Positions 6,686 through 57,020 of a stretch of 64,000 nucleotides of DNA are shown one piece after another. A program made the position numbers and the translations under genes. The stretch covers positions 151,051,050 to 151,115,049 of the forward strand of contig NC_052151.1 of assembly GCF_902713615.1 (NCBI RefSeq), given 5' to 3'. The stretch is from Scyliorhinus canicula. Lineage: Eukaryota. Position 1 is the first letter of the stretch. The number at the start of each line of letters is the position of its first letter. The notes below the pieces were generated by a model. It ran no database searches. It was not told the origin of the DNA and worked only from the letters and a program-made list of their open reading frames with translations.

Positions 6686-6845
6686 GGAGGGGGCTGGTCT
6701 GGGGGTGGAGAGGGGCCTGGTCTGGGGGTGGAGAGGGGCCTGGTCTGGGGGTGGGGAGGGGGCTGGTCTGGGGGTGGGGAGGGGCCTGGTCTGGGGGCTG
6801 GTGTGGGGGTGGGGGCTGGTCTGGTCTCGGGGGGGGGGGGGGGGT
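6686..6845 (+). repeat. 23-bp G-rich minisatellite (GGTCTGGGGGTGGRGAGGGGSCT, 4 copies plus partial) with poly-G runs, in CPSF3 intron 1
   Basis: Units start at 6696, 6719, 6742, 6765 and 6788; poly-G at ~6614-6628 and ~6829-6844. Confidence 0.9.
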
Positions 6846-8389: not shown

Positions 8390-11293
8390 CTACACTATGC
8401 CCTTATCATCCATATGCTTATCCAATAAATTTTTAAATGCCCTCAATGTTGGCATGTTCACTACTGTTGCAGGTAGGGCATTCCACGACCTCACCACTCT
8501 TTGCGTAAAAAACCCACCTCTGACCTCTGTCCTATATCTATTACCCCTCAATTTAAGGCTATGTCCCCTCGTGCTAGCCACCTCCATCCGCGGGAGAAGG
8601 CTCTCGCTGTCCACCCTATCTAACCCTCTGATCATTTTGTATGCCTCTATTAAGTCACCTCTTAACCTTCTTCTCTCTAACGAAAACAACCTCAAGTCCA
8701 TCAGCCTTTCCTCATAAGATTTTCCCTCCATAACAGGCAACATCCTGGTAAATCTCCTCTGCACCCGTTCCAAAGCTTCCACGTCCTTCCTATAATGAGG
8801 CGACCAGAACTGTACGCAATACTCCAAATGCGGCCGTACTAGAGTTTTGTACAACTGCAACATGACCTCATGGCTCCGGAACTCAATCCCTCTACCAATA
8901 AAGGCCAACACACCATAGGCCTTCTTCACAACCCTATCAACCTGGGTGGCAACTTTCAGGGATCTATGTACATGGACACCGAGATCCCTCTGCTCATCCA
9001 CACTACCAAGAATTTTACCATTAGCCAAATATTCCGCATTTCTGTTATTCTTTCCAAAGTGAATCACCTCACACTTCTCCACATTAAACTCCATTTGCCA
9101 CCTCTCAGCCCAGCTCTGCAGCCTATCTATGTCCCTCTGTAACCTGCAACATCCTTCCGCACTGTCTACAACTCCACCGACTTTAGTGTCGTCTGCAAAT
9201 TTACTCACCCATCCTTCTGCGCCCTCCTCTAGGTCATTTATAAAAATGACAAACAGCAACGGCCCCAGAACAGATCCTTGTGGTACGCCACTCGTAACTG
9301 AACTCCATTCTGAACATTTCCCATCAACTACCACTCTCTGTCTTCTTTCAACTAGCCAATTTCTGATCCACATCTCTAAATCACCCTCAATCCCCAGCCT
9401 CCGTATTTTCTGCAATAGACGACCGTGGGGAACCTTATCAAACGCTTTACTGAAATCCATATACACCACATCAACTGCTCTACCCTCGTCTACCTGTTCA
9501 GTCACCTTCTCAAAGAACTCGATAAGGTTTGTGAGGCATGACCTACCCTTCACAAAACCATGCTGACTGTCCCTAATCATATTATTCCTATCTAGATGAT
9601 TATAAATCGTATCTTTTATAATCCTCTCCAAGACTTTACCCACCACAGACGTTAGGCTCACCGGCCTATAGTTACCGGGGTTATCTCTACTCCCCTTCTT
9701 GAACAAAGGGACCACATTTGCTATCCTCCAGTCCTCTGGCACTATTCCTGTAGCCAATGATGACCTAAAAATCAAAGCCAAAGGCTCAGCAATCTCTTCC
9801 CTGGCTTCCCAGAGAATCCTAGGATAAATCCCATCCGGCCCCGGGGACTTATCTATTTTCACCTTGTCCAGAATTGCCAACACTTCTTCCCTACGCACCT
9901 CAATGCCATCTATTCTAATAGCCTGGGTCTCAGCATTCTCCTCCACAATATTATCTTTTTCTTGAGTGAATACTGACGAAAAGTATTCATTTAGTATCTC
10001 GCTTATCTCCTCAGCCTCCACACACAACTTCCCACCACTGTCCTTGACTGGCCCTACTCTTACCCTAGTCATTCTTTTATTCCTGACATACCTATAGAAA
10101 GCTTTTGGGTTTTCCTTGATCCTACCTGCCAAAGACTTCTCATGTCCCCTCCTTGCTCGTCTCAGCTCTCTCTTTAGATCCTTCCTCGCTTCCTTGTAAA
10201 TATCAAGCGCCCCAACTGAAACTTCATGCCTCATCTTTACATAGGCCTCCTTCTTCCTCTTAACAAGAGATTCCACTTCTTTGGTAAACCACGGTTCCCT
10301 CGCTCGACCCCTTCCTCCCTGCCTGACTGGTACGTACTTATCAAGAACATGCAATAGCTGTTCCTTGAACAAACTCCACATATCCAGTGTGCCCAACCCT
10401 TGCAGCCTACTTCTCCAACCAACACATCCTAAGTCATGTCTAATGGCATCATAATTGCCCTTCCCCCAGCTATAACTCTTGCCCTGCGGGGTATACTTAT
10501 CCCTTTCCATCACTAACGTAAAGGTCACCGAATTGTGGTCACTGTTTCCAAAGTGCTCACCTACCTCCAGATCTAACACCTGGCCTGGTTCATTACCCAA
10601 AACCAAATCCAATGTGGCCTCGCCTCTTGTTGGCCTGTCAACATATTGTGTCAGGAAACCCTCCTGCACACATTGTACAAAGAATGACCCATCTAATGTA
10701 CTCGAACTATATCTTTTCCAGTCAATATTTGGAAAGTTAAAGTCTCCCATAACAACTACCCTGTTACTTTCGCTCTTTTCCAGAATCATCTTCGCCATCC
10801 TTTCCTCTACATCCATAGAACTATTAGGGGGCCTATAGAAAACTCCCAACAGGGTGACCTCTCCTTTCCTGTTTCTAACCTCAGCCCATACTACCTCAGA
10901 AGAAGAGTCCCCATCTAGCATCCTTTCCGCCACCGTAATACTGTCTTTGACTAGCAGCGCCACACCTCCCCCTCTTTTGCCCCCTTCTCTGAACTTACTA
11001 AAACACCTAAACCCCGGAACCTGCAACAACCATTCCTGTCCCTGCTCTATCCATGTCTCTGAAATGGCCACAACATCGAAGTCCCAGGTACCAACCCATG
11101 CTGCCAGTTCCCCTACCTTATTTCGTATACTCCTGGCATTGAAGTAGACACACTTCAAACCACCTACCTGAACACTGGCACCCTCCTGCGAAGTCAAATC
11201 TGTGCTCCTGACCTCTATACTCTCAATCTCCCGTACCCTAAAACTACAATCCAGGTTCCCATGCCCCTGCTGAATTAGTTTAAACCCCCCCAA
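8390..11293 (-). CDS. CR1 ORF2: APE endonuclease plus reverse transcriptase, uninterrupted (~967 aa)
   Basis: YFNARS, SETW, GDFN and SDH endonuclease motifs; [24 protein letters not shown] and FADD RT motifs; no stops; no Met before ~residue 125. Confidence 0.95.
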   Translation of the reverse strand: MGGFKLIQQGHGNLDCSFRVREIESIEVRSTDLTSQEGASVQVGGLKCVYFNARSIRNKVGELAAWVGTWDFDVVAISETWIEQGQEWLLQVPGFRCFSKFREGGKRGGGVALLVKDSITVAERMLDGDSSSEVVWAEVRNRKGEVTLLGVFYRPPNSSMDVEERMAKMILEKSESNRVVVMGDFNFPNIDWKRYSSSTLDGSFFVQCVQEGFLTQYVDRPTRGEATLDLVLGNEPGQVLDLEVGEHFGNSDHNSVTFTLVMERDKYTPQGKSYSWGKGNYDAIRHDLGCVGWRSRLQGLGTLDMWSLFKEQLLHVLDKYVPVRQGGRGRAREPWFTKEVESLVKRKKEAYVKMRHEVSVGALDIYKEARKDLKRELRRARRGHEKSLAGRIKENPKAFYRYVRNKRMTRVRVGPVKDSGGKLCVEAEEISEILNEYFSSVFTQEKDNIVEENAETQAIRIDGIEVRREEVLAILDKVKIDKSPGPDGIYPRILWEAREEIAEPLALIFRSSLATGIVPEDWRIANVVPLFKKGSRDNPGNYRPVSLTSVVGKVLERIIKDTIYNHLDRNNMIRDSQHGFVKGRSCLTNLIEFFEKVTEQVDEGRAVDVVYMDFSKAFDKVPHGRLLQKIRRLGIEGDLEMWIRNWLVERRQRVVVDGKCSEWSSVTSGVPQGSVLGPLLFVIFINDLEEGAEGWVSKFADDTKVGGVVDSAEGCCRLQRDIDRLQSWAERWQMEFNVEKCEVIHFGKNNRNAEYLANGKILGSVDEQRDLGVHVHRSLKVATQVDRVVKKAYGVLAFIGRGIEFRSHEVMLQLYKTLVRPHLEYCVQFWSPHYRKDVEALERVQRRFTRMLPVMEGKSYEERLMDLRLFSLERRRLRGDLIEAYKMIRGLDRVDSESLLPRMEVASTRGHSLKLRGNRYRTEVRGGFFTQRVVRSWNALPATVVNMPTLRAFKNLLDKHMDDKGIV

Positions 11294-14954: not shown

Positions 14955-15426
14955 GTGTAGAGGGTGGTGCGGACAGTGGTGGTATTGAAGGGGGTTGGTG
15001 TTGAGGAGGTTGTCTAGTAACAATAATCAATAATCTTTATTTGTGTCACAAGTAGGCTTACATTAACACTGCAATAAAGTTACTGTGAAATTCACCCAGT
15101 TGCCACACTCTGGCACTGGTCTTTTGCTGGCTGCCACCTTTGTGTCTTGAGTCCCCAAGTTCAGAGAATGAATTCTCGAGAAGATGGAAACTGGGTGAGG
15201 ATGGCATCGTGTATGGCCATTATGTCCCTGTAATCCAATAGTTTATTGGTACAATATTAACTCTCTAGCTTTACAATTAAGCATGGCAGCCTCAGTGAGG
15301 TATCAAAGGGTGCTAGGATCTCTGGAACAGTACCTCAGCTCCTTGGGAGATTTAAAAAGGAAATTTTTTAAAATGGATTAGTCCATTAAAAAACTGTGGT
15401 ACGAGTGAGAAGAATCCTGTATAACT

Positions 15427-15657
15427 TAAAAAAAAAAAAATTTAGAGTACCCAATTCATTTTTTTCTAATTAAGGGGCAATTTTTGCGTGTTCAATCCAC
15501 CTACCTTGCACATCTTTGGGTTGTGGGGGCGAAACCCACGCAGACACGGGGAGAATGTGCAAACTCCACACGGACAGTGACCCAGAGCCGGGATTGAACC
15601 TGGGACCTCGGCGCCGTGAGGCAACAGGGCTAACCCACTGCGCCATCGTGCTGCCCT
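15427..15657 (-). mobile_element. Short tRNA-SINE with T-rich tail
   Basis: 16-bp TSD AGAATCCTGTATAACT at 15411-15426 and 15658-15673; A/B boxes. Confidence 0.9.
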
Positions 15658-16169
15658 AGAATCCTGTATAACTGGCAGACTGAGAGGAAATCCAGACAGA
15701 GTAGGACAACATTTCATGACATTACAATACCCAACTGCAGAGCATGTTTTGCACGTAATATTGGGCAAATCCTGGGTGTGAAATTTTCAATTACAGCCTT
15801 GTAATTGAGTTGACTCGCGTCGAAAACAAAGTCGCTGCACCATCAAATAGGCAGCTGGCAACAGCAAGACGGGAATATAATTGCCTATTGCTTTGTTTCT
15901 TTTATTTTTCTCTTTCCCTCTTCATAGACAGCTTGGCTGTAGGATTTACATATGTTTCTCTTTAGTTTTTCCTCCATTATTTTGCTCTCCAGCAAAAGTA
16001 AACAAAATAAATCTTGTAAACAGCCCATACAAGTTTGAGATTGCAGTTTTAAAGTAGAAGAATGATTACTGTGATCTCTTACTGAATGCAAGATCATTGT
16101 TAAGCTTATGGTTGGTGAGTGACCACCTGAAAACTTGGAAGTGTGACAACAATCAGAATCTTCTTTGAC

Positions 16170-16510
16170 ATGACACCTTTAGCATAGTCAAATGTAAATT
16201 TGACACCAAGACACCTAAGGAGGCATTAGGACAGATCGTCAAGGAGGTAGGTTTCAAAGAGCACCTTGAAGGAGGAGAGAGATGTAGAGGGGCAGAAAGG
16301 GTCAGAGAGTGAATTCTTGATCCTGAGGCCCAGGCAGCTGAAGGCAAGGCCATTAGTGCTGGAGTCAGTAAAATCAGGGATGTGCCAGAGGCCAGAACTG
16401 CAGGAATGCAGAGATTTCAGAGGACTGCAGGACTGGAACAATTTCCAGAAGAAGAAAGAGTCAGGGTCATTAAATTCTTTGAAAACAAGAATGAGAATTT
16501 TAAATTTCTG
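16170..16510 (-). mobile_element. L2-like LINE 3' fragment
   Basis: Reads FKILILVFK...GLAFSCLG...FKVLFETYLLD, typical of the L2 ORF2 C-terminus. Confidence 0.6.
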
Positions 16511-16519
16511 CCAGACCAC

Positions 16520-16810
16520 ATCGGAGGCTCCCCTGGGGTCAGCCCCCCCACCTCCGGCCGCCACTCAACCCTTCCACGCCGAGGTCCCGCTGGCCCAGGG
16601 CAGGTTAGAACGGCGCTGGTGGGACTCGGCTCATTTCTTACAGCCGTTCGGCCCATCCTGGCTGGGGAATCGGCGGGCCGGCAGCGTAGAGTGGCCCGCT
16701 ACCGCCGCCGATTCTTCGCTTTGCGGAGAATTGCGTGCCGGCGCCGGGGTGGCGTGGCCCGTTCACGAGGATTCTCCGGCCTGGCCCAGGGCTGGGAGAA
16801 TCCCGCCCCA
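16520..16810. repeat. GC/CpG-rich MITE-like repeat with GGAGAATCCCGCC-type end; related copies at ~24380-24625, 28975-29020, 32323-32505, 46090-46400, 57690-58230 and 62400-63020
   Basis: Shared GGGATTCTCC/GGAGAATCCC terminal motifs and GC-rich interiors. Confidence 0.55.
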
Positions 16811-17117
16811 GGTTTCTGCTCCTGCCACATTACTGTGCTATGGAGAGGAGGGGGTCAGTTCAAGCAGCATTGTTTTCCTATTACAGCCTGTCCAGAAATA
16901 GAAGGAATTTCAATTATATTTTTTTATAATAAGCGGTGCGGCAGTTTCCCACCCCTAAGTTTTTAAGTGAACCAATTTACTAATAGTCCCACAGCAAACT
17001 TGAGTTACGATTAATGCAGCAGGTTAGTTTGTTGTAGGCATTAAAAACCTTTGAAAAGTAAGAGCTGCTAAATATGCTCATCAGTGGCAACACGTCCCAG
17101 CAGACCCAGAGAAGATT

Positions 17118-19560
17118 GCATCACAGCGAAGTGGGAGACAGATCCTCCCTCAACCAAGAGAATGCACTCAGTCTCACCAAGTTGATAAACAGGGAGTGAA
17201 TGCCCTCTAGCCTGCTTTCTTCAACAGCAACAAGCTCCTGCCTTCTCAAACGGCCAAATCTCCAAGGAGAGCAAACTCTCCCAAAAAGTTATTTCATCAC
17301 CTGGGAAGGCACCCCAGTCTCCAAAGGGAAGATGCTCAAAGAAGAACCTTTGTCTTAACCAATTTCTTCAAAGGCTTGTCAAAACCTAATAATAGTGAGG
17401 AAACAAAAGATTTAAAGATAAGGAGATGGATGACAAACCACTGAAAAGTTATAAAGCCCAGAAGAGCAGTCCCAAGTTACGGGAGTAACACGGGCCCTCT
17501 CCATGTCTGAGAGAAAAGACACGGGCCCTGAAGAATCGAGCAGGAAAAGTGCTACGCCACTCATCCTGTTTGAGGAGGTCGATGTAATATTTGATGACAA
17601 TGCTGGTTTTCTAAATGCAATTAAGACCTTCATGGCAGCCGCGAAGCAGCCGGTTATACTCGCCACCACTGATCTCAACTTCAGCTTAACGTTTGAGTGC
17701 TGCTTCGAAGAAATCTGCTTCAAAGTGCCATCTTTGGCAAATGTTGCCACCTACCTTCAGCTCTTTTGCCTAATTAAGAACCGCAACGGCCCCAGAACAG
17801 ATCCTTGTGGTACGCCACTCGTAACTGAACTCCATTCTGAACATTTCCCATCAACCACCACTCTCTGTCTTCTTTCAACTAGCCAATTTCTGATCCACAT
17901 CTCTAAATCACCCTCAATCCCCAGCCTCCGTATTTTCTGCAATAGCCGACCGTGGGGAACCTTATCAAACGCTTTACTGAAATAAAGGTGTGTAGGTTCG
18001 GTTGATCTTAGATTAGGATAAATGTTTGGCACAACATTGTGGGCCGAAAAGCCTGTGCTGTGCTGTACTGTTCTATGTTCTATTGAGCCTCTCATAGCTA
18101 ACATCCTCCGGACCAGGCAACATCCTGGTAAACCTCCTCTGCACCCTCTCCAAAGCCTCCACATCCTTCTGGTAGACTGGTGACCAGAATTGTGCACAGT
18201 ATTCCAAGGGCAGCCGTTCCAAGGTTCTATACAACTGTAGCATGACTTGCCAGTTTTTACACTCTAATACGTGTGGCATACGACAGAGCATCCTGCACTT
18301 GCAGTTCTGGGTGAGAAGTGGAGGTGGTTACCATGTGGATAAGCCCCTCCCCCCGCTGAAGAAATAAGCATGATTCCAAGCCCAGCTCAAGAAGAATTAG
18401 TCGGAAACGCTCTTGCTACTGAAGACGGAGAGGCTCCATTGTGAAGACACAGGATGTTCCCAACTGCAACACAGGATGCACAGAGAACCTGCTTGGCTTA
18501 AAACACATCACTGGCTCTTCAAGTGATCTCTTTTCCATGTTCAAGCAGGAGGTCATTTCGCTGGAGCAGTGGAGAAGGCGAGTGCATATTCTCCTGGAGT
18601 TCCAGAGGAGAAGCTGGACTTCATATTCCATAATTTGGAGATTCTTCTGCCTCTGCCAGTCCAAGATGCTCCTGACCCAAAGGGCCCTGAAAATCTGACT
18701 GCAGAGGATGCTGAGCTTCCTGTCTGCAGTTCTGCACATACAGCTGCAACACTGCCTCAGGGCAGCAACACATCTGTCAATGGCTGCCTTGTCAAAATCA
18801 CCCGCAGTGAAAACGTCACAGAAAAGCCGTCTTGTTCGATGACAGCGACTTGTTTGACTCAGCTGATTGAGAGCCATACCTTTGTGATTTAACCAAAGAA
18901 AACTACCTCACCTTGTGTTGTTGGAAAAGTAGCAGGAAGCCAAGCTAGCAGAGATGGTCCCTCTGGGAACAAAACTCATTCCTCCAAAGAAGCCAAGGAC
19001 ACTAGCAGAACAAAATTGTTGTGAGTCGGTATCTTTGTGTATCGGATCGCTAGCCGAGTTCATTCTTGGACTGCTGCGGTTGAGAGAGAGGGAAGCGGAG
19101 ATTAAAAATGGCATCTTGGCCGAGGGCAGAGCTGAGTCGGCAGATTGGTGTTCCTCACACAGCTTTGGGGAGATGAGACAACTGTGGAAGCCTTGAGCTG
19201 GAAGAAGTGTCGGTCACAGATTCAGCAAATCTGTTACCAAGTGCAAGGAACCAGAGAAGGACCAATGGAGGAACTCTCCCTTCAGGTTCCAAATCGACAA
19301 AAACAGAAATGCTGTGTTCACTCAGTTTTCCCATCTTCACACGAGCACTGCATCTAAAAGAATAGAGGTGCTGAAGTCTGTGTTCTCTGGCAAGGCATTT
19401 GCAAATGTGTGTAACAGATGAGCAAGTGCTGCAGAATATCTGCCAGCTCTCTGCATTATCTGTAGGACAGAGAAACTGAAAGAACAAAACTAAAACGCAG
19501 GTTTCTGCATTATTTGGATAGTGCACATTTGGAGCTGCCTAAACACATTCTGGAAGTCCC
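17118..19560 (+). pseudogene. ATAD5: Intronless, N-terminally truncated ATAD5 (ELG1) retrocopy, interrupted by a CR1 patchwork at ~17783-18265
   Basis: Translates SQRSGRQIL..TQSHQVDKQGVN, SRKSATPLILFEEVDVIFDDNAGFLNAIKTFM, CGIRQSILHLQFWVRSGGG, GCTENLLGLK, IFHNLEILLPLPV and FLHYLDSAHLELPKHILE with no introns; in-frame TAG at 17208-17210 and frameshifts. Confidence 0.9.
17783..18265. mobile_element. Composite CR1 insertion (minus / plus / minus fragments)
   Basis: 17783-17983 minus RT fragment; 17984-18082 plus 3' end with TGTTCTATGTTCTAT tail; 18083-18265 minus ORF2 3' fragment. Confidence 0.85.
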
Positions 19561-20542
19561 AACCTCACTATTGGCTGGGCCAGCCCAGTGAACCCATAAT
19601 CTATGCTCCCGCTTTCCAAGGAGCAAGAGGGGGGGAGAAGAACAGCATGACTGTGTGGAGATCTTGAAAGAAAAGAGGAACTGAGCCTGGCAACAGAGAA
19701 ACCATTGCACAACCCAGACCTGATCCTGTTTACAGATGGCTCCTCCTTTGTTGATAATGGCATCCGAAAAGCAGACAGAGCCGTCACAAGCCTACACGAG
19801 ATTGTAGCAAAGGGTTGTCTGCCCTCAGCGACGTCAGCCCAACAGGCTGAGTTGATATTGTCAGAACCTACCAAATACTGTCAGTTCTGCTTCCCTACTG
19901 GCATCGGCACTTGGGGTGACCCACCAGAAGGAGGACATGACATTGTCTCCAGAGTTTGGGTCTACGTGAAGAAAATACAAAAATAAACTTTGGGAGCTAA
20001 GTGCGAAGGTCCTTTCCAGGTGCTATTGACCACCCAAACATCTGTCAAGGTGCAAGGGAAGAAGATCTGGATACACGCCTCTCATGTGAAACAATCACAC
20101 TGGGATTAAAACTTTTATCTGCTAAACGGACAATTATTATTTGCCAATATGTTCAACCTCTTTGTTATATCGGCTGCTAGTATTTTAAGTGTTTGCATTC
20201 CTTTGACTAGCCATGCCTTGCACAGACATGTTCACAGGGAGCTACATGTCAACACCTTCCTTTACATGTCCTCAGTCTCTATCCTCCGTCCCATGAAGCT
20301 GGGCTACTGGATGGCTGGGTTTTTTGGGAACCTCATTAGTTCAAGGCTTGATCTTATTCTTTATTATCATTCTAAATCTGTATTGTGTTTTTCTGCTTGT
20401 TAAGTGTTGCTGTAAACAAATAACTGAAACCCCTGCTGAGATTATACCCCTGCAATGCTCTCACCATCTTTCCCTACACCACAAACACACTTCCTATTTT
20501 TAAAATGCAGGCTTATTAAGGCTCACCTATCACAAGGGGGAC
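19550..20542 (+). mobile_element. Class I (gamma/epsilon-like) ERV internal remnants: RT tether/RNase H, integrase C-terminus, possible env fragment, PPT
   Basis: PNLTI...HDCVE...PLHNPDLILFTDGSSFV...TSAQQAEL; GPFQVLLTTQTSVKVQGKKIWIHASHVK; PPT AAGGGGGA at 20534-20541. Confidence 0.85.
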
Positions 20543-20786
20543 TGTAGAGGGCAAAGTAACCTAATCAACTATGAAGCTAATTAACTACTAAAACTAAGCT
20601 AATCAACTATGTGTGCGTCACACACGTAAATGTCGTCAAATATGCGTGTGCTGATCTAAATAAGTTTGTACATTAGTGTCTGCGGGCTCATTTACCTGAA
20701 GATGTAAGAACTGCGTACCTCAATAAAGGATTTCTAAAAACTACCACACGGACTCCGACTTTTTGTGAAAAAGATATGTTCTATCA
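20543..20786 (+). mobile_element. 3' LTR of the ERV
   Basis: Starts TGTAGA right after the PPT, ends TCTATCA; internal AATAAA at ~20722. Confidence 0.75.
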
Positions 20787-21031
20787 GTGAAGTAGGCACG
20801 CAGATATTACAATGATATAAATTTATCCAGTAGAGTTGGGTTAGATGGTGGTGGTCCAACTTGGACAGTGCTTGCATCTTTGTGGCCTGCCAATTGGATT
20901 TTAAAAGAGCAGACTGGCTGCGTAGCTCAGAAAGGTAATGTTAAACTGCTCAAAACGCCAGAGCCTTGGGTCATGTGACCTTCCTTCTCCATAGTGACTT
21001 AAACAGGGATGTTTATCCAGTGTCTGGATTT

Positions 21032-21257
21032 TTAAAAATAAATTTAGAGTACCCAATTATTATTTGTTTTCCAATTAAGGGGCAATTTAGCGTGGCCAAT
21101 CCACCTACCCTGCACATCTTTGGGTTGTGGGGTTGAAACCCACGCAGACACGGGGAGAATGTGCAAACTCCACACGACCAGTGACCCAGGGCCGGGATTC
21201 GAACCCGGGCCCTCAGCGCCGATGTCTCAGTGCTAACCACTGCGCCACGTGCCGCCC
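21032..21257 (-). mobile_element. Short tRNA-SINE
   Basis: 16-bp TSD TCCAGTGTCTGGATTT at 21016-21031 and 21258-21273. Confidence 0.9.
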
Positions 21258-21711
21258 TCCAGTGTCTGGATTTGGTTGTTTCCAAGACTGATATGTCTCC
21301 GCCATTATGGGTTGAAAGGGGTGGCATTTGTCATTGAGGGTCCATGTTTGGGAAACCATTATGTCAGCAGACCGATGGCTTATCAAATGCAAATGGAATT
21401 CCTGTAGCTCTTTTTGAAATTGGTCTGTACAGTCCCAGGTTGTCTATTAGATGTTCCTTAGACATAATGAGGTGTGACATTCCTGAAACTGAGAAGATAA
21501 TTCTTTTGTTCTGGAGACTGCTGAGGATAATTTCCAGACAGAACCATCTTAACTGTCTTTGTTCTGCAGAAAAGTCCAGTTTAAAAATAAGAAATCATAA
21601 CGAGGATAAAGTTTGAAACTATATACAGGGTTGAGTTTCTGCTCCACATCGGAGGAACCCAACAAATTAAACGGCTATTACCAAAGTTGTTTTCAAATAT
21701 CTATCTCCATG

Positions 21712-22040
21712 GCCGCGCCAGTTCCTATATCTGTAATTTCCGCGGCCTCATAACTCTCCGAGATAGCTTCACTCTCATCGCTGATTTTAATTGCTCTGAC
21801 AATGGTGGCCGTGCCTTCAACTGCTGAGGCCCGATGCTCTGGAATTCGCTCCCTCAATCTCTCCACCTCTACACCTACCTCTACTTTTGCTACCTAAAGA
21901 TAATCCTTAAAACCTACCTCTTGAACCAAGCTTTTGGTCATTTGGCCTAATACCTCCTTATATTGCTCTGTGTCATACTTTGTTTTACAGTAATGTTTTA
22001 TTACATTAAAGGTGCTATATGAAAATAATGTGCTGTTCAA
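21712..22040 (+). mobile_element. L2-like LINE 3' fragment
   Basis: GGTGGCCGTGCCTTCA..CTCTGGAATTC..CCTTAAAACCTACCTC..AAAGGTGCTATAT, typical of an L2 3' end. Confidence 0.65.
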
Positions 22041-22478
22041 TCTCCATTGTGATGCACTATAAGGCCTGTATCGAGGGAGTTCTTAGTTTGAGGTGGTATG
22101 AAAACATGTGATGTATACTAGTTAGCTACCTACCTTTCCTGCAGTTTGTGAACATTATATGGAGAGTTCAATACAATTTCATGTGGGATTTATATTTGCG
22201 TATCATTTGTATAACGGAGATCGAGTAGTTTATCTTCCCGCACTTCCTTCTACTCCTCCGAGGTCTCACTTCCAGAGGTATCAGCTTTATACATGTTGAT
22301 GAAAATTTGGTTGGATATCATCAGAAAACATCCAAATTATTTTCTTTTTAAAAAAAAGTATTTTTATTCAAGTTTTTGTCCAAATGATTTTCATCTGAGG
22401 TAAATAATGTTCAATGCATGTTTTATGACTTTTTCTTTGTTTCGCAGGTTTATCTGCTTTTAAAAACAATGGTGAGAT

Positions 22479-22550
22479 ATGTTTCGGAAAGGAAAGAAAC
22501 GCCACAGCAGTAGCAGTTCTCAAGGCAGCGAAGTCAGCACAAAAAGCAAG
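22479..22550 (+). CDS. ITGB1BP1: ITGB1BP1 (ICAP1) first coding exon (exon starts at 22448)
   Basis: MFRKGKKRHSSSSSQGSEVSTKSK, near-identical to the human ICAP1 N-terminus with its NLS; AAG|GTAGGT donor. Confidence 0.97.
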
Positions 22551-34080: not shown

Positions 34081-34295
34081 AAAAAAAAAAAATTTAGAGT
34101 ACCCAATTATTTTTTCCAATTAAAGGGCAATTTGGTGTGGCCAATCCACCTAACCTGCACATCTTTGGGGTGTGGGGGTGAAACCCACGCAGACACGGGG
34201 AGAATGTGCAAACTCCACACAGACAGTGACCCAGAGCTGGAATTGAACCTGGGTCCTCAGGCAGCAATGCTAACCACTGTGCCACCTTCCTGCCC
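34081..34295 (-). mobile_element. Short tRNA-SINE
   Basis: TSD GTCAGCATAATT at 34069-34080 and 34296-34307. Confidence 0.85.
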
Positions 34296-56383: not shown

Positions 56384-57020
56384 TCTTTTATATAAATTTA
56401 GATTATCCAATTACTTTTTCCAATTAAGGGGGCAATTTAGCGTGGCCAATCCGCCTACTCTGCACATTTTTGGTTGTGGGGGCCACTGACCTCGGGTGTT
56501 GGTGTGCAAAGGCAGCAGCACATACTTTGATCGGCGGTTCAATAAACTAATAAGTTAGTCTGATCATTGAATTACTCTGTTTGTTGTGTTGTGATGCGGG
56601 CTCATGTTATGAGGGGGGAAAATTAAGTGTAAGCTGAACAGTGCAATGTCAAATCAACTATCCTAGAAACACAGTCAATATGCTGTGGCAAAGGTTCCCA
56701 AACAGAAGTGGGGGGATGGTGGAGATGGATGGTATTGCACCCAATATGGGTGTCAGGCCAGGGGAAGGGAATGGGGAATGGTGGTGAGGGGGACATGCAA
56801 CATTAAAAAAAAAAAATTAGACTACCCAATTTCCGATTAAGGGGAAATTTAGCGCGGTCAATCCACCTACCCAGCACATTTTTGGGTTGTGGGGACGAAA
56901 CCCACGCAAATACAGGGAGAATGTGCAAACTCCACACGGACAGTGACCCAGAGCCGGGATTGAACCTGGGACCTCAGCGCCATGAGGCAGCTGTGCTAAC
57001 CACTAGGCCACCGTGCTGCC
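56384..57020 (-). mobile_element. Composite of SINE, unique sequence and SINE 3' fragment inside a single TSD
   Basis: 16-bp TSD TGAGGTAGACTAATTT at 56368-56383 and 57021-57036. Confidence 0.75.

What the first reader, a model, noticed from the sequence alone, without database searches (positions are those of the whole stretch)
17118..20786. Host ATAD5 cDNA captured by an endogenous retrovirus (v-onc-style transduction)
Seen: an intronless ~1.9 kb of ATAD5 coding sequence runs from just after Walker A, through Walker B (LFEEVD), into the C-terminal region. It stops about 7 codons before the ATAD5 stop and has no 3'UTR, poly(A) or evident L1-type TSD. It runs directly into retroviral pol tether/RNase H (PNLTI..HDC..PL.NPDL.LFTDGSS..TSAQ.AEL), the integrase C-terminus, a possible env remnant, a PPT and a TG..CA LTR, all on the same strand. 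At ~19548-19570 the junction ATTCTGGAAGTCCCAACCTCACTATT reads both as ATAD5 'HILE' and as pol 'ILExPNLTI'. Known: acute transforming retroviruses acquire spliced host mRNA by template switching at short homologies during reverse transcription, and ATAD5 is the PCNA-unloading RFC-like subunit. Inference: this is a defective class-I ERV carrying ATAD5 in place of gag/RT. A truncated RFC2-5-binding fragment could once have acted as a dominant negative; this copy is now dead (stops, frameshifts, CR1 insertion). No 5' LTR is visible.
Basis: partly seen in the sequence, partly recalled or inferred. Interest (0 to 1): 0.9.

Follow-up and report, generated by a model that had tools for sequence, protein, structure and literature searches.

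The report
Shark ATAD5 retrocopy fused to ERV remnant
A dead, intron-free copy of the last third of the shark DNA-replication gene ATAD5 is joined base-to-base to the tail end of a gammaretrovirus-like endogenous retrovirus. A retroviral reverse transcriptase probably made the copy, which is a known process not yet described in sharks, and nothing shows that the hybrid ever spread as a virus.

Summary
Window 17118-19555 (+) is a processed, 5'- and 3'-truncated copy of ATAD5 mRNA. It starts just after Walker A, includes Walker B, and ends 7 codons before the stop. It crosses 8 exon-exon joins and has no poly(A) or 3'UTR. It is 81% identical to catshark (Scyliorhinus) ATAD5 and is badly decayed: 16 frameshifts, 3 stops, one LINE-derived insertion and small deletions.

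At 19555/19558 it abuts a class-I ERV pol remnant on the same strand, with at most 3 nt unassigned. The remnant holds the RT-RNase H connection, the N-terminal half of RNase H and the integrase C-terminal domain. A short post-pol stretch, a polypurine tract and a 244-bp TG...CA LTR-like unit follow (to 20786).

No 5' LTR, gag, protease or RT lies anywhere in the 64 kb, and there is no second copy. The "env remnant" and the LTR limits are unverified.

Best reading: one ERV-mediated retroposition, in which reverse transcriptase switched template from viral RNA to ATAD5 mRNA. The product is now a truncated fossil. This matches LTR-mediated retroposition (Tan et al. 2016). A replicating, v-onc-style ATAD5-transducing virus is neither supported nor excluded, because no shark genome DNA was searchable here. 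Interest is moderate to low.

The parts
17118..19555 (+). Processed (intronless) ATAD5 fragment, a pseudogene. It corresponds to S. torazame ATAD5 residues 1201-1911 of 1918: after Walker A, through Walker B, to 7 codons before the stop. It is broken by 16 frameshifts, 3 in-frame stops, one LINE-derived insertion of about 0.5 kb on the opposite strand, and small deletions totalling about 44 residues.
   Evidence: LINE reverse-transcriptase hit (Pfam RVT_1)
19555..19558 (+). ATAD5 | pol junction. The last matched ATAD5 base is 19555 and the first matched pol codon is at 19555-19558. The two reading frames differ.
19556..20109 (+). Remnant of a class-I (gamma/epsilon-like) ERV pol gene: the RT-RNase H connection, the N-terminal half of RNase H and the integrase C-terminal domain. 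It is broken by one large internal deletion (the rest of RNase H and most of integrase), about 2 frameshifts and 2 in-frame stops. Everything upstream of the connection is absent.
20110..20533 (+). Post-pol stretch, possibly the two ends of env. It contains a hydrophobic N-terminal peptide and a membrane-anchor-like hydrophobic segment in different frames. If it is env, nearly all of env is missing. No protein family matched.
   Evidence: (translations)
20534..20542 (+). Polypurine tract immediately 5' of the LTR-like unit.
   Evidence: read directly from the sequence
20543..20786 (+). Putative 3' LTR of 244 bp. It runs TG...CA, has a 21-nt near-repeat pair in the U3-like part, and has AATAAA about 60 nt before the end. 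It is a single copy, so its limits are unverified.
   Evidence: (family D2)

Best explanation
This is a fossil of one ERV-mediated (LTR-element-mediated) retroposition event.

Proposed sequence of events (inferred unless marked otherwise):
1. In the germ line of a catshark-lineage ancestor, a particle of a gamma/epsilon-like endogenous retrovirus held viral RNA and a spliced ATAD5 mRNA.
2. Minus-strand DNA synthesis copied the 3' end of the viral RNA: the LTR region, polypurine tract, post-pol region and part of pol.
3. In the RT-RNase H connection of pol, the enzyme switched template onto ATAD5 mRNA, 7 codons before its stop.
4. It then copied the mRNA towards its 5' end, as far as just after Walker A.
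5. The cDNA then entered the genome in one of two ways. Either it returned to viral RNA and integrated as a defective provirus whose 5' part was later lost, or it was an incomplete cDNA taken up at a chromosome break.
6. The locus then decayed neutrally.

Shown: the spliced, doubly truncated ATAD5 copy; the sharp same-strand junction with pol; the absence of poly(A); the old age.

Inferred: the template switch itself, the time order, and the fate of the 5' half.
For: - Intronless and colinear across 8 intron positions.
- 3'-truncated inside the last coding exon, with no 3'UTR or poly(A), no flanking direct repeats, and no ATAD5 tail after the LTR.
- The pol match begins within 0-3 nt of the end of the ATAD5 match, on the same strand.
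- The ERV identity of the downstream part is solid.
- Frameshift density is similar in both parts: 16 in about 1.95 kb against about 2 in 0.55 kb. This is compatible with one age.
- These are the features listed for LTR-mediated retroposition: partial mRNA copy, 3' truncation, no poly(A) or TSD, and internal element ORFs replaced. That process accounts for about half of the young retrocopies in zebrafish and chicken (Tan et al. 2016, PMC5131818).
Against: - No ERV sequence is recognisable 5' of the ATAD5 fragment. There is no second LTR in the 17 kb upstream or anywhere in the 64 kb.
- Microhomology at the junction cannot be measured without the parental ATAD5 and ERV DNA.
- The ERV part itself has large internal deletions. 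This shows that deletions did shape the locus, or its template.
- Only one locus was seen.
Confidence: 0.6

Rival explanations
1. Independent events brought together by deletion. A LINE-made ATAD5 processed pseudogene and an ERV provirus inserted next to or into each other. One or more genomic deletions then removed the ATAD5 3' end with its poly(A), together with the ERV 5' LTR through RT.
For: - The ERV part shows large internal deletions, and the locus is old and heavily decayed.
- An apparently intact LINE ORF2 with endonuclease and RT domains lies 6 kb away, so LINE machinery exists in this genome.
- No 5' ERV flank is present.
Against: - It needs at least three events with a chance same-strand arrangement.
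- One deletion end must fall in the last 21 nt of the ATAD5 coding sequence.
- No poly(A), no target-site duplication and no ATAD5 remainder lies downstream of the LTR.
- The 5' flank shows no ERV either, so the variant 'retrocopy inserted into a provirus' needs yet another deletion.
Confidence: 0.22
2. A replication-defective, ATAD5-transducing retrovirus or ERV lineage was propagated with a helper (v-onc style, or like the crocodilian ERVs that carry captured host mRNAs). This locus is one truncated copy of it.
For: - The architecture of the 3' half fits: host cDNA, then pol remnant, then polypurine tract and LTR.
- Multi-copy ERV lineages carrying captured KIT-ligand or nectin3 mRNA are documented in crocodilians (Chong et al. 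2014, PMC4299795).
- The clear ATAD5 match starts within about 2-6 codons of a conserved exon start. Capture through splicing would predict this. Such a near-coincidence has roughly a 1 in 8 chance by my estimate.
Against: - No 5' LTR, primer-binding site, leader or gag is present.
- Only a single copy is visible.
- The captured sequence shows no sign of having been kept open, and it is out of frame with pol.
- The searchable collections hold no shark DNA, so the absence of other copies there says nothing either way.
Confidence: 0.1
3. Assembly artefact: two unrelated reads or contigs were joined at the junction.
For: None specific. The source assembly and its read support could not be examined.
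Against: - There are no N runs in the window.
- The two parts have the same orientation and a similar degree of decay.
- The junction lies in unique, non-repetitive sequence.
Confidence: 0.03

Closest known systems
LTR-mediated retroposition (Tan et al. 2016, Genome Res, PMC5131818), including the human HERV-K/FAM8A1 processed pseudogene cited there
   Same: A partial, spliced host mRNA copy is fused directly to internal sequence of an LTR element. It is 3'-truncated, has no poly(A) and no L1-type target-site duplication, and sits where element ORFs would be.
   Different: Here only the 3' side carries element sequence. The 5' element flank and 5' LTR are missing, and the microsimilarity could not be measured. 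The host is a cartilaginous fish and the element a gamma/epsilon-like ERV, a combination not covered in that study.
Crocodilian ERV lineages with captured host mRNAs: CrocERV29/KIT-ligand and CrocERV31/nectin3 (Chong et al. 2014, PMC4299795)
   Same: A vertebrate ERV carries an intronless host gene copy.
   Different: Those are multi-copy lineages with both LTRs. They carry whole host ORFs that are still open and under purifying selection. This locus is a single, truncated, decayed copy with a partial ORF.
Acutely transforming (v-onc) retroviruses (textbook knowledge, not tested here)
   Same: The 3' host-virus junction is of the kind formed by non-homologous template switching during reverse transcription.
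   Different: No evidence exists for packaging or replication signals, expression, a growth-promoting cargo, or horizontal or helper-dependent spread.
LINE-made (L1-type) processed pseudogenes
   Same: An intronless, 5'-truncated copy of an mRNA.
   Different: It lacks the 3' end of the mRNA, the poly(A) tail and target-site duplications.

Membership tests
LTR/ERV-mediated retrocopy (Tan et al. 2016) | Intronless copy of a spliced host mRNA | tested here: met
   The copy is colinear over 8 intron positions of the elephant-shark gene.
LTR/ERV-mediated retrocopy (Tan et al. 2016) | Partial mRNA with no poly(A) and no L1-type target-site duplication | tested here: met
   The copy ends 7 codons before the stop. 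There is no A-run and no flanking direct repeat.
LTR/ERV-mediated retrocopy (Tan et al. 2016) | LTR-element sequence abuts the retrocopy on the 3' side, on the same strand | tested here: met
   The pol match starts 0-3 nt after the ATAD5 match ends.
LTR/ERV-mediated retrocopy (Tan et al. 2016) | LTR-element sequence, and a second LTR, on the 5' side | tested here: not met
   The window holds no LTR copy, no retroviral protein match and no Pfam hit upstream. A non-coding leader could not be recognised without a family reference, and later loss is possible.
LTR/ERV-mediated retrocopy (Tan et al. 2016) | Microsimilarity shared by mRNA and element at the switch point | not testable with these tools
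   This needs the ATAD5 last exon and an ERV family copy from the source species. DNA of the S. canicula, S. torazame and Heterodontus assemblies was not retrievable.
Host-gene-transducing retrovirus / ERV lineage | Host insert lies between two LTRs with a primer-binding site and leader | tested here: not met
   Only one LTR-like unit is present, and Rfam gave no hit.
Host-gene-transducing retrovirus / ERV lineage | Several non-orthologous copies share the same junction | not testable with these tools
   The window holds one copy. The junction 24-mer is absent from the viral and metagenome collections, but these contain no shark genomes.
Host-gene-transducing retrovirus / ERV lineage | Captured ORF is open, or in frame with a viral ORF | tested here: not met
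   The ATAD5 part has 16 frameshifts and 3 stops, and ATAD5 and pol are in different frames at the junction.
L1-type processed pseudogene | Complete 3' end with poly(A) tail and target-site duplication | tested here: not met
Class I (gamma/epsilon-like) endogenous retrovirus | pol domains most similar to those of gammaretroviruses | tested here: met
   RNase H matches XMRV/MLV at E=9e-8. Pfam MLVIN_C matches at E=1.8e-8, above its cut-off.
Class I (gamma/epsilon-like) endogenous retrovirus | Complete provirus plan: LTR-gag-pro-pol-env-LTR | tested here: not met
   Only part of pol, a post-pol stretch, the polypurine tract and one LTR-like unit are present.
ATAD5/Elg1 (source of the host part) | Sequence similarity over the AAA+ Walker B region and the C-terminal region | tested here: met
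   Human ATAD5 matches at E=8.7e-35. Over 653 residues the copy is 81% identical to Scyliorhinus ATAD5. The Walker A segment is not recognisably present.

The most novel reading that the evidence does not exclude
The locus is one surviving copy of a defective gamma-like retrovirus lineage of sharks. That lineage had captured the C-terminal, RFC-binding part of the PCNA unloader ATAD5, a DNA-replication factor rather than a growth-signalling gene, and spread with a helper before it decayed.
Probability: 0.08. Interest if true: 0.7.

Novelty: new member of a known kind. Interest (0 to 1): 0.35.

Why it matters
Retrocopies are scarce in vertebrates that lack active L1-type elements, and it is debated which enzymes make them. 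A retrocopy welded to ERV pol in a cartilaginous fish would extend retrovirus/LTR-mediated retroposition to the oldest jawed-vertebrate lineage. It would also give a dated example, on the catshark stem, of an ERV reverse transcriptase copying a host mRNA. The locus has no sign of present function. Its value is as a mechanistic fossil and as a marker for comparative shark genomics.

Tried and rejected
1. Extending the ATAD5 match upstream of 17118 through Walker A. A colinear K-x-AA-x-YA-x-Q resemblance can be seen by eye, but unconstrained protein and DNA alignments are no better than shuffles. It was left open.
2. Looking for a 5' LTR or other ERV pieces with sensitive blastn and with all fetched pol-like proteins. 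Nothing was found.
3. Looking for the missing ATAD5 tail downstream of the LTR. Nothing was found. One 6-of-8 match 17 kb away has no ATAD5 context and is chance.
4. Confirming env with Pfam. No retroviral family matched.
5. A PDB search of a 29-residue piece of the RT-RNase H connection gave no hit because the piece is too short. Ray, turtle and unnamed (Logan-assembly) pol-like proteins settled the question instead.
6. Fetching the parental or related DNA. The S. torazame ATAD5 protein is not on record, and the S. canicula, S. torazame and Heterodontus assemblies are 'too large', so no DNA was returned.
7. An exact search for the junction in the viral and metagenome collections gave zero hits. 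This is uninformative.
8. Rfam on 15000-22500 gave nothing.
9. Dual coding or a dominant-negative product was rejected as unsupported. The copy is riddled with frameshifts and is out of frame with pol.
Full report
**What is there**

The + strand from 17118 to 19555 is ATAD5-derived. A 93-residue piece around Walker B (it reads LILFEEVDVIFDD) matches human ATAD5 in the PDB (8uii_A, residues 1284-1374) at E=8.7e-35, and yeast Elg1 weakly. A search of 1.84 billion representative proteins returned vertebrate ATAD5s. The best was the skate Rhinoraja longicauda, at 80% identity on that piece. tblastn of 18 ATAD5 orthologues places all of them colinearly on 17118-19555. Every alignment stops exactly 7 residues before the protein's C-terminus. 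The copy shares the 'KHILE' ending, which among the 19 orthologues compared occurs only in the two Scyliorhinus species.

**The copy is processed**

The elephant-shark ATAD5 gene (locus L001) has 8 introns, of 235 to about 1,900 nt, inside the matched span. The S. canicula gene covers 67.6 kb. I ran a frameshift-aware protein-to-DNA alignment on the two sides of a nested repeat separately. It accounts for 653 residues in about 1.95 kb, so no space remains for introns. The fragment is 81% identical to both Scyliorhinus proteins, 78% to Mustelus and 77% to Cetorhinus.

The fragment is dead. It carries 16 frameshifts, 3 in-frame stops, one LINE-derived insertion of about 0.5 kb on the opposite strand (Pfam RVT_1), and small deletions worth about 44 residues.

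The clear match begins just after Walker A, within about 2-6 codons of a conserved exon start. Homology further upstream could not be shown. There is no 3'UTR, no poly(A) and no flanking direct repeat. The missing last 7 codons are not found downstream.

**Age and origin of the copy**

The copy keeps 389 of the 451 residues that are invariant in five sharks. At sites that changed on the Scyliorhinus stem it has the derived state at 15 and the ancestral state at 13. It has none of the 13 states specific to S. canicula or to S. torazame. The template mRNA therefore came from a lineage about halfway along the catshark stem. By my rough conversion, the copy has since taken about 6% nucleotide change. 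It is an old insertion.

**The retroviral part**

From 19556 the same strand reads as pol of a class-I ERV.
- The N-terminal half of RNase H matches XMRV and MLV RNase H structures (E=9e-8).
- A 39-residue piece matches Pfam MLVIN_C above its curated cut-off (E=1.8e-8).
- Annotated 'ribonuclease H-like' proteins of Heterodontus, Scyliorhinus and Pristiophorus are 60-82% identical and cover the RT-RNase H connection.

The family is therefore present in several shark orders. The pol remnant (19556-20109) lacks everything upstream of the connection. It has one large internal deletion (the rest of RNase H and most of integrase), about 2 frameshifts and 2 stops.

The 424 nt after pol contain a hydrophobic N-terminal peptide and a membrane-anchor-like segment. 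This could be the two ends of env, but no family search supports it.

A polypurine tract (20534-20542) directly precedes a 244-bp unit that starts TG and ends CA. The unit has a 21-nt near-repeat pair and an AATAAA about 60 nt from its end. It is LTR-like, but it is the only copy in the window, so its limits are unconfirmed.

**The junction**

The ATAD5 match ends at 19555. Four pol-like proteins were compared: Rhinoraja P0281, Leucoraja P0286, a protein from a Logan read assembly (P0308, organism not given) and a turtle protein (P0312). All have 13-84 further N-terminal residues, yet all lose their match at 19555-19561. The P0286 match to 19555-19602 was reached by only 1 of 2000 shuffles, and that of P0281 by 90 of 2000. 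The junction is therefore sharp, with at most about 3 nt unassigned. The two genes are in different frames there. The length of any microhomology is not measurable without the parental DNA.

**What is missing**

No second LTR, gag, protease, RT, further RNase H or integrase, or further ATAD5 sequence occurs anywhere in the 64 kb. The 1.4 kb upstream of the fragment has no Pfam or Rfam hit.

**Interpretation**

A LINE-made pseudogene starts at the poly(A) tail, so it cannot be 3'-truncated without a later deletion. Direct same-strand fusion of a 3'-truncated, spliced mRNA copy to internal ERV sequence is the signature of LTR-mediated retroposition. That signature comprises partial copies, 3' truncation, no poly(A) or target-site duplication, element ORFs replaced, and switches at microsimilarity. 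The process makes about half of the young retrocopies in zebrafish and chicken, and HERV-K/FAM8A1 is the human case (Tan et al. 2016).

I therefore favour a single reverse-transcription event with a template switch from ERV RNA to ATAD5 mRNA (confidence 0.6). The missing 5' half has two possible explanations: later deletion of a defective provirus, or uptake of an incomplete cDNA at a chromosome break. The data do not choose between them.

The main rival is two independent insertions followed by deletions (0.22). It needs more events and a chance orientation, but it fits the deletion-rich state of the ERV part.

It could not be tested. Shark assemblies were not retrievable, and the DNA collections that can be scanned hold no shark genomes.

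**Verdict**

This is a new, incomplete example of a known kind of event, of moderate to low interest unless further copies turn up.

1. While reasoning, I began to recall from memory short stretches of human ATAD5, of a murine gammaretrovirus pol linker and of a generic env anchor pattern. I also wrote out hypothetical back-translated codons for the parent gene.
2. HSP tables printed by my scripts show piece bounds that approximate some break positions.

Alignments across frameshifts were reduced to scores, counts and outer bounds.

Noticed in passing
window 8390-11293 (-): An uninterrupted 967-codon LINE ORF2 with endonuclease (Exo_endo_phos) and reverse-transcriptase (RVT_1) domains, so an apparently young non-LTR retrotransposon. 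A 205-bp stretch of it (9252-9456) is 98.5% identical to part of the repeat nested in the ATAD5 fragment. That nested repeat consists of two non-colinear RT fragments of very different divergence. At least six further decayed relatives are in the window.
   Followed up: partly
window 21032-21257, 15432-15657 and several more (e.g. 34084-34295, 56807-57020): A SINE family of about 225 bp with many copies in the window, 77-87% alike. The copy just downstream of the LTR-like unit is bracketed by a perfect 16-nt target-site duplication at 21016-21031 and 21258-21273. The copy at 15432 follows an A-run and is also bracketed by a repeat ('agaatcctgtataact').
   Followed up: partly
window 16239-16382 (+) and 21776-21924 (-): An inverted pair about 150 bp long and 68% identical lies on either side of the whole ATAD5-ERV locus (E=1e-6). 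It is probably two copies of a dispersed repeat, but no check was made for a link to the locus.
   Followed up: no
window 16500-16850: A G+C-rich block just upstream of the ATAD5 fragment has long spurious ORFs on both strands and no Pfam hit. Its nature is unknown.
   Followed up: partly
window 6686-6833: A G-rich minisatellite with a 23-nt unit in about 5 copies. Strong strand-asymmetric G/C skew blocks occur at 8-12 kb (the LINE) and at 38-42 kb (unexplained; long ORFs there have no Pfam hit).
   Followed up: no
proteins P0265-P0271 (Heterodontus, Scyliorhinus, Pristiophorus); P0280, P0283 (frogs): Several shark genomes carry annotated 'ribonuclease H-like' genes of 145-194 residues from the same ERV family. 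Four of the seven start at the same 'MLPLP' methionine in the RT-RNase H connection; the other three start at a methionine further downstream. Two frog proteins of about 220 residues combine RNase_H with MLVIN_C and so lack most of integrase, much like the remnant here. Whether any of these is more than a decayed ERV piece was not examined.
   Followed up: no
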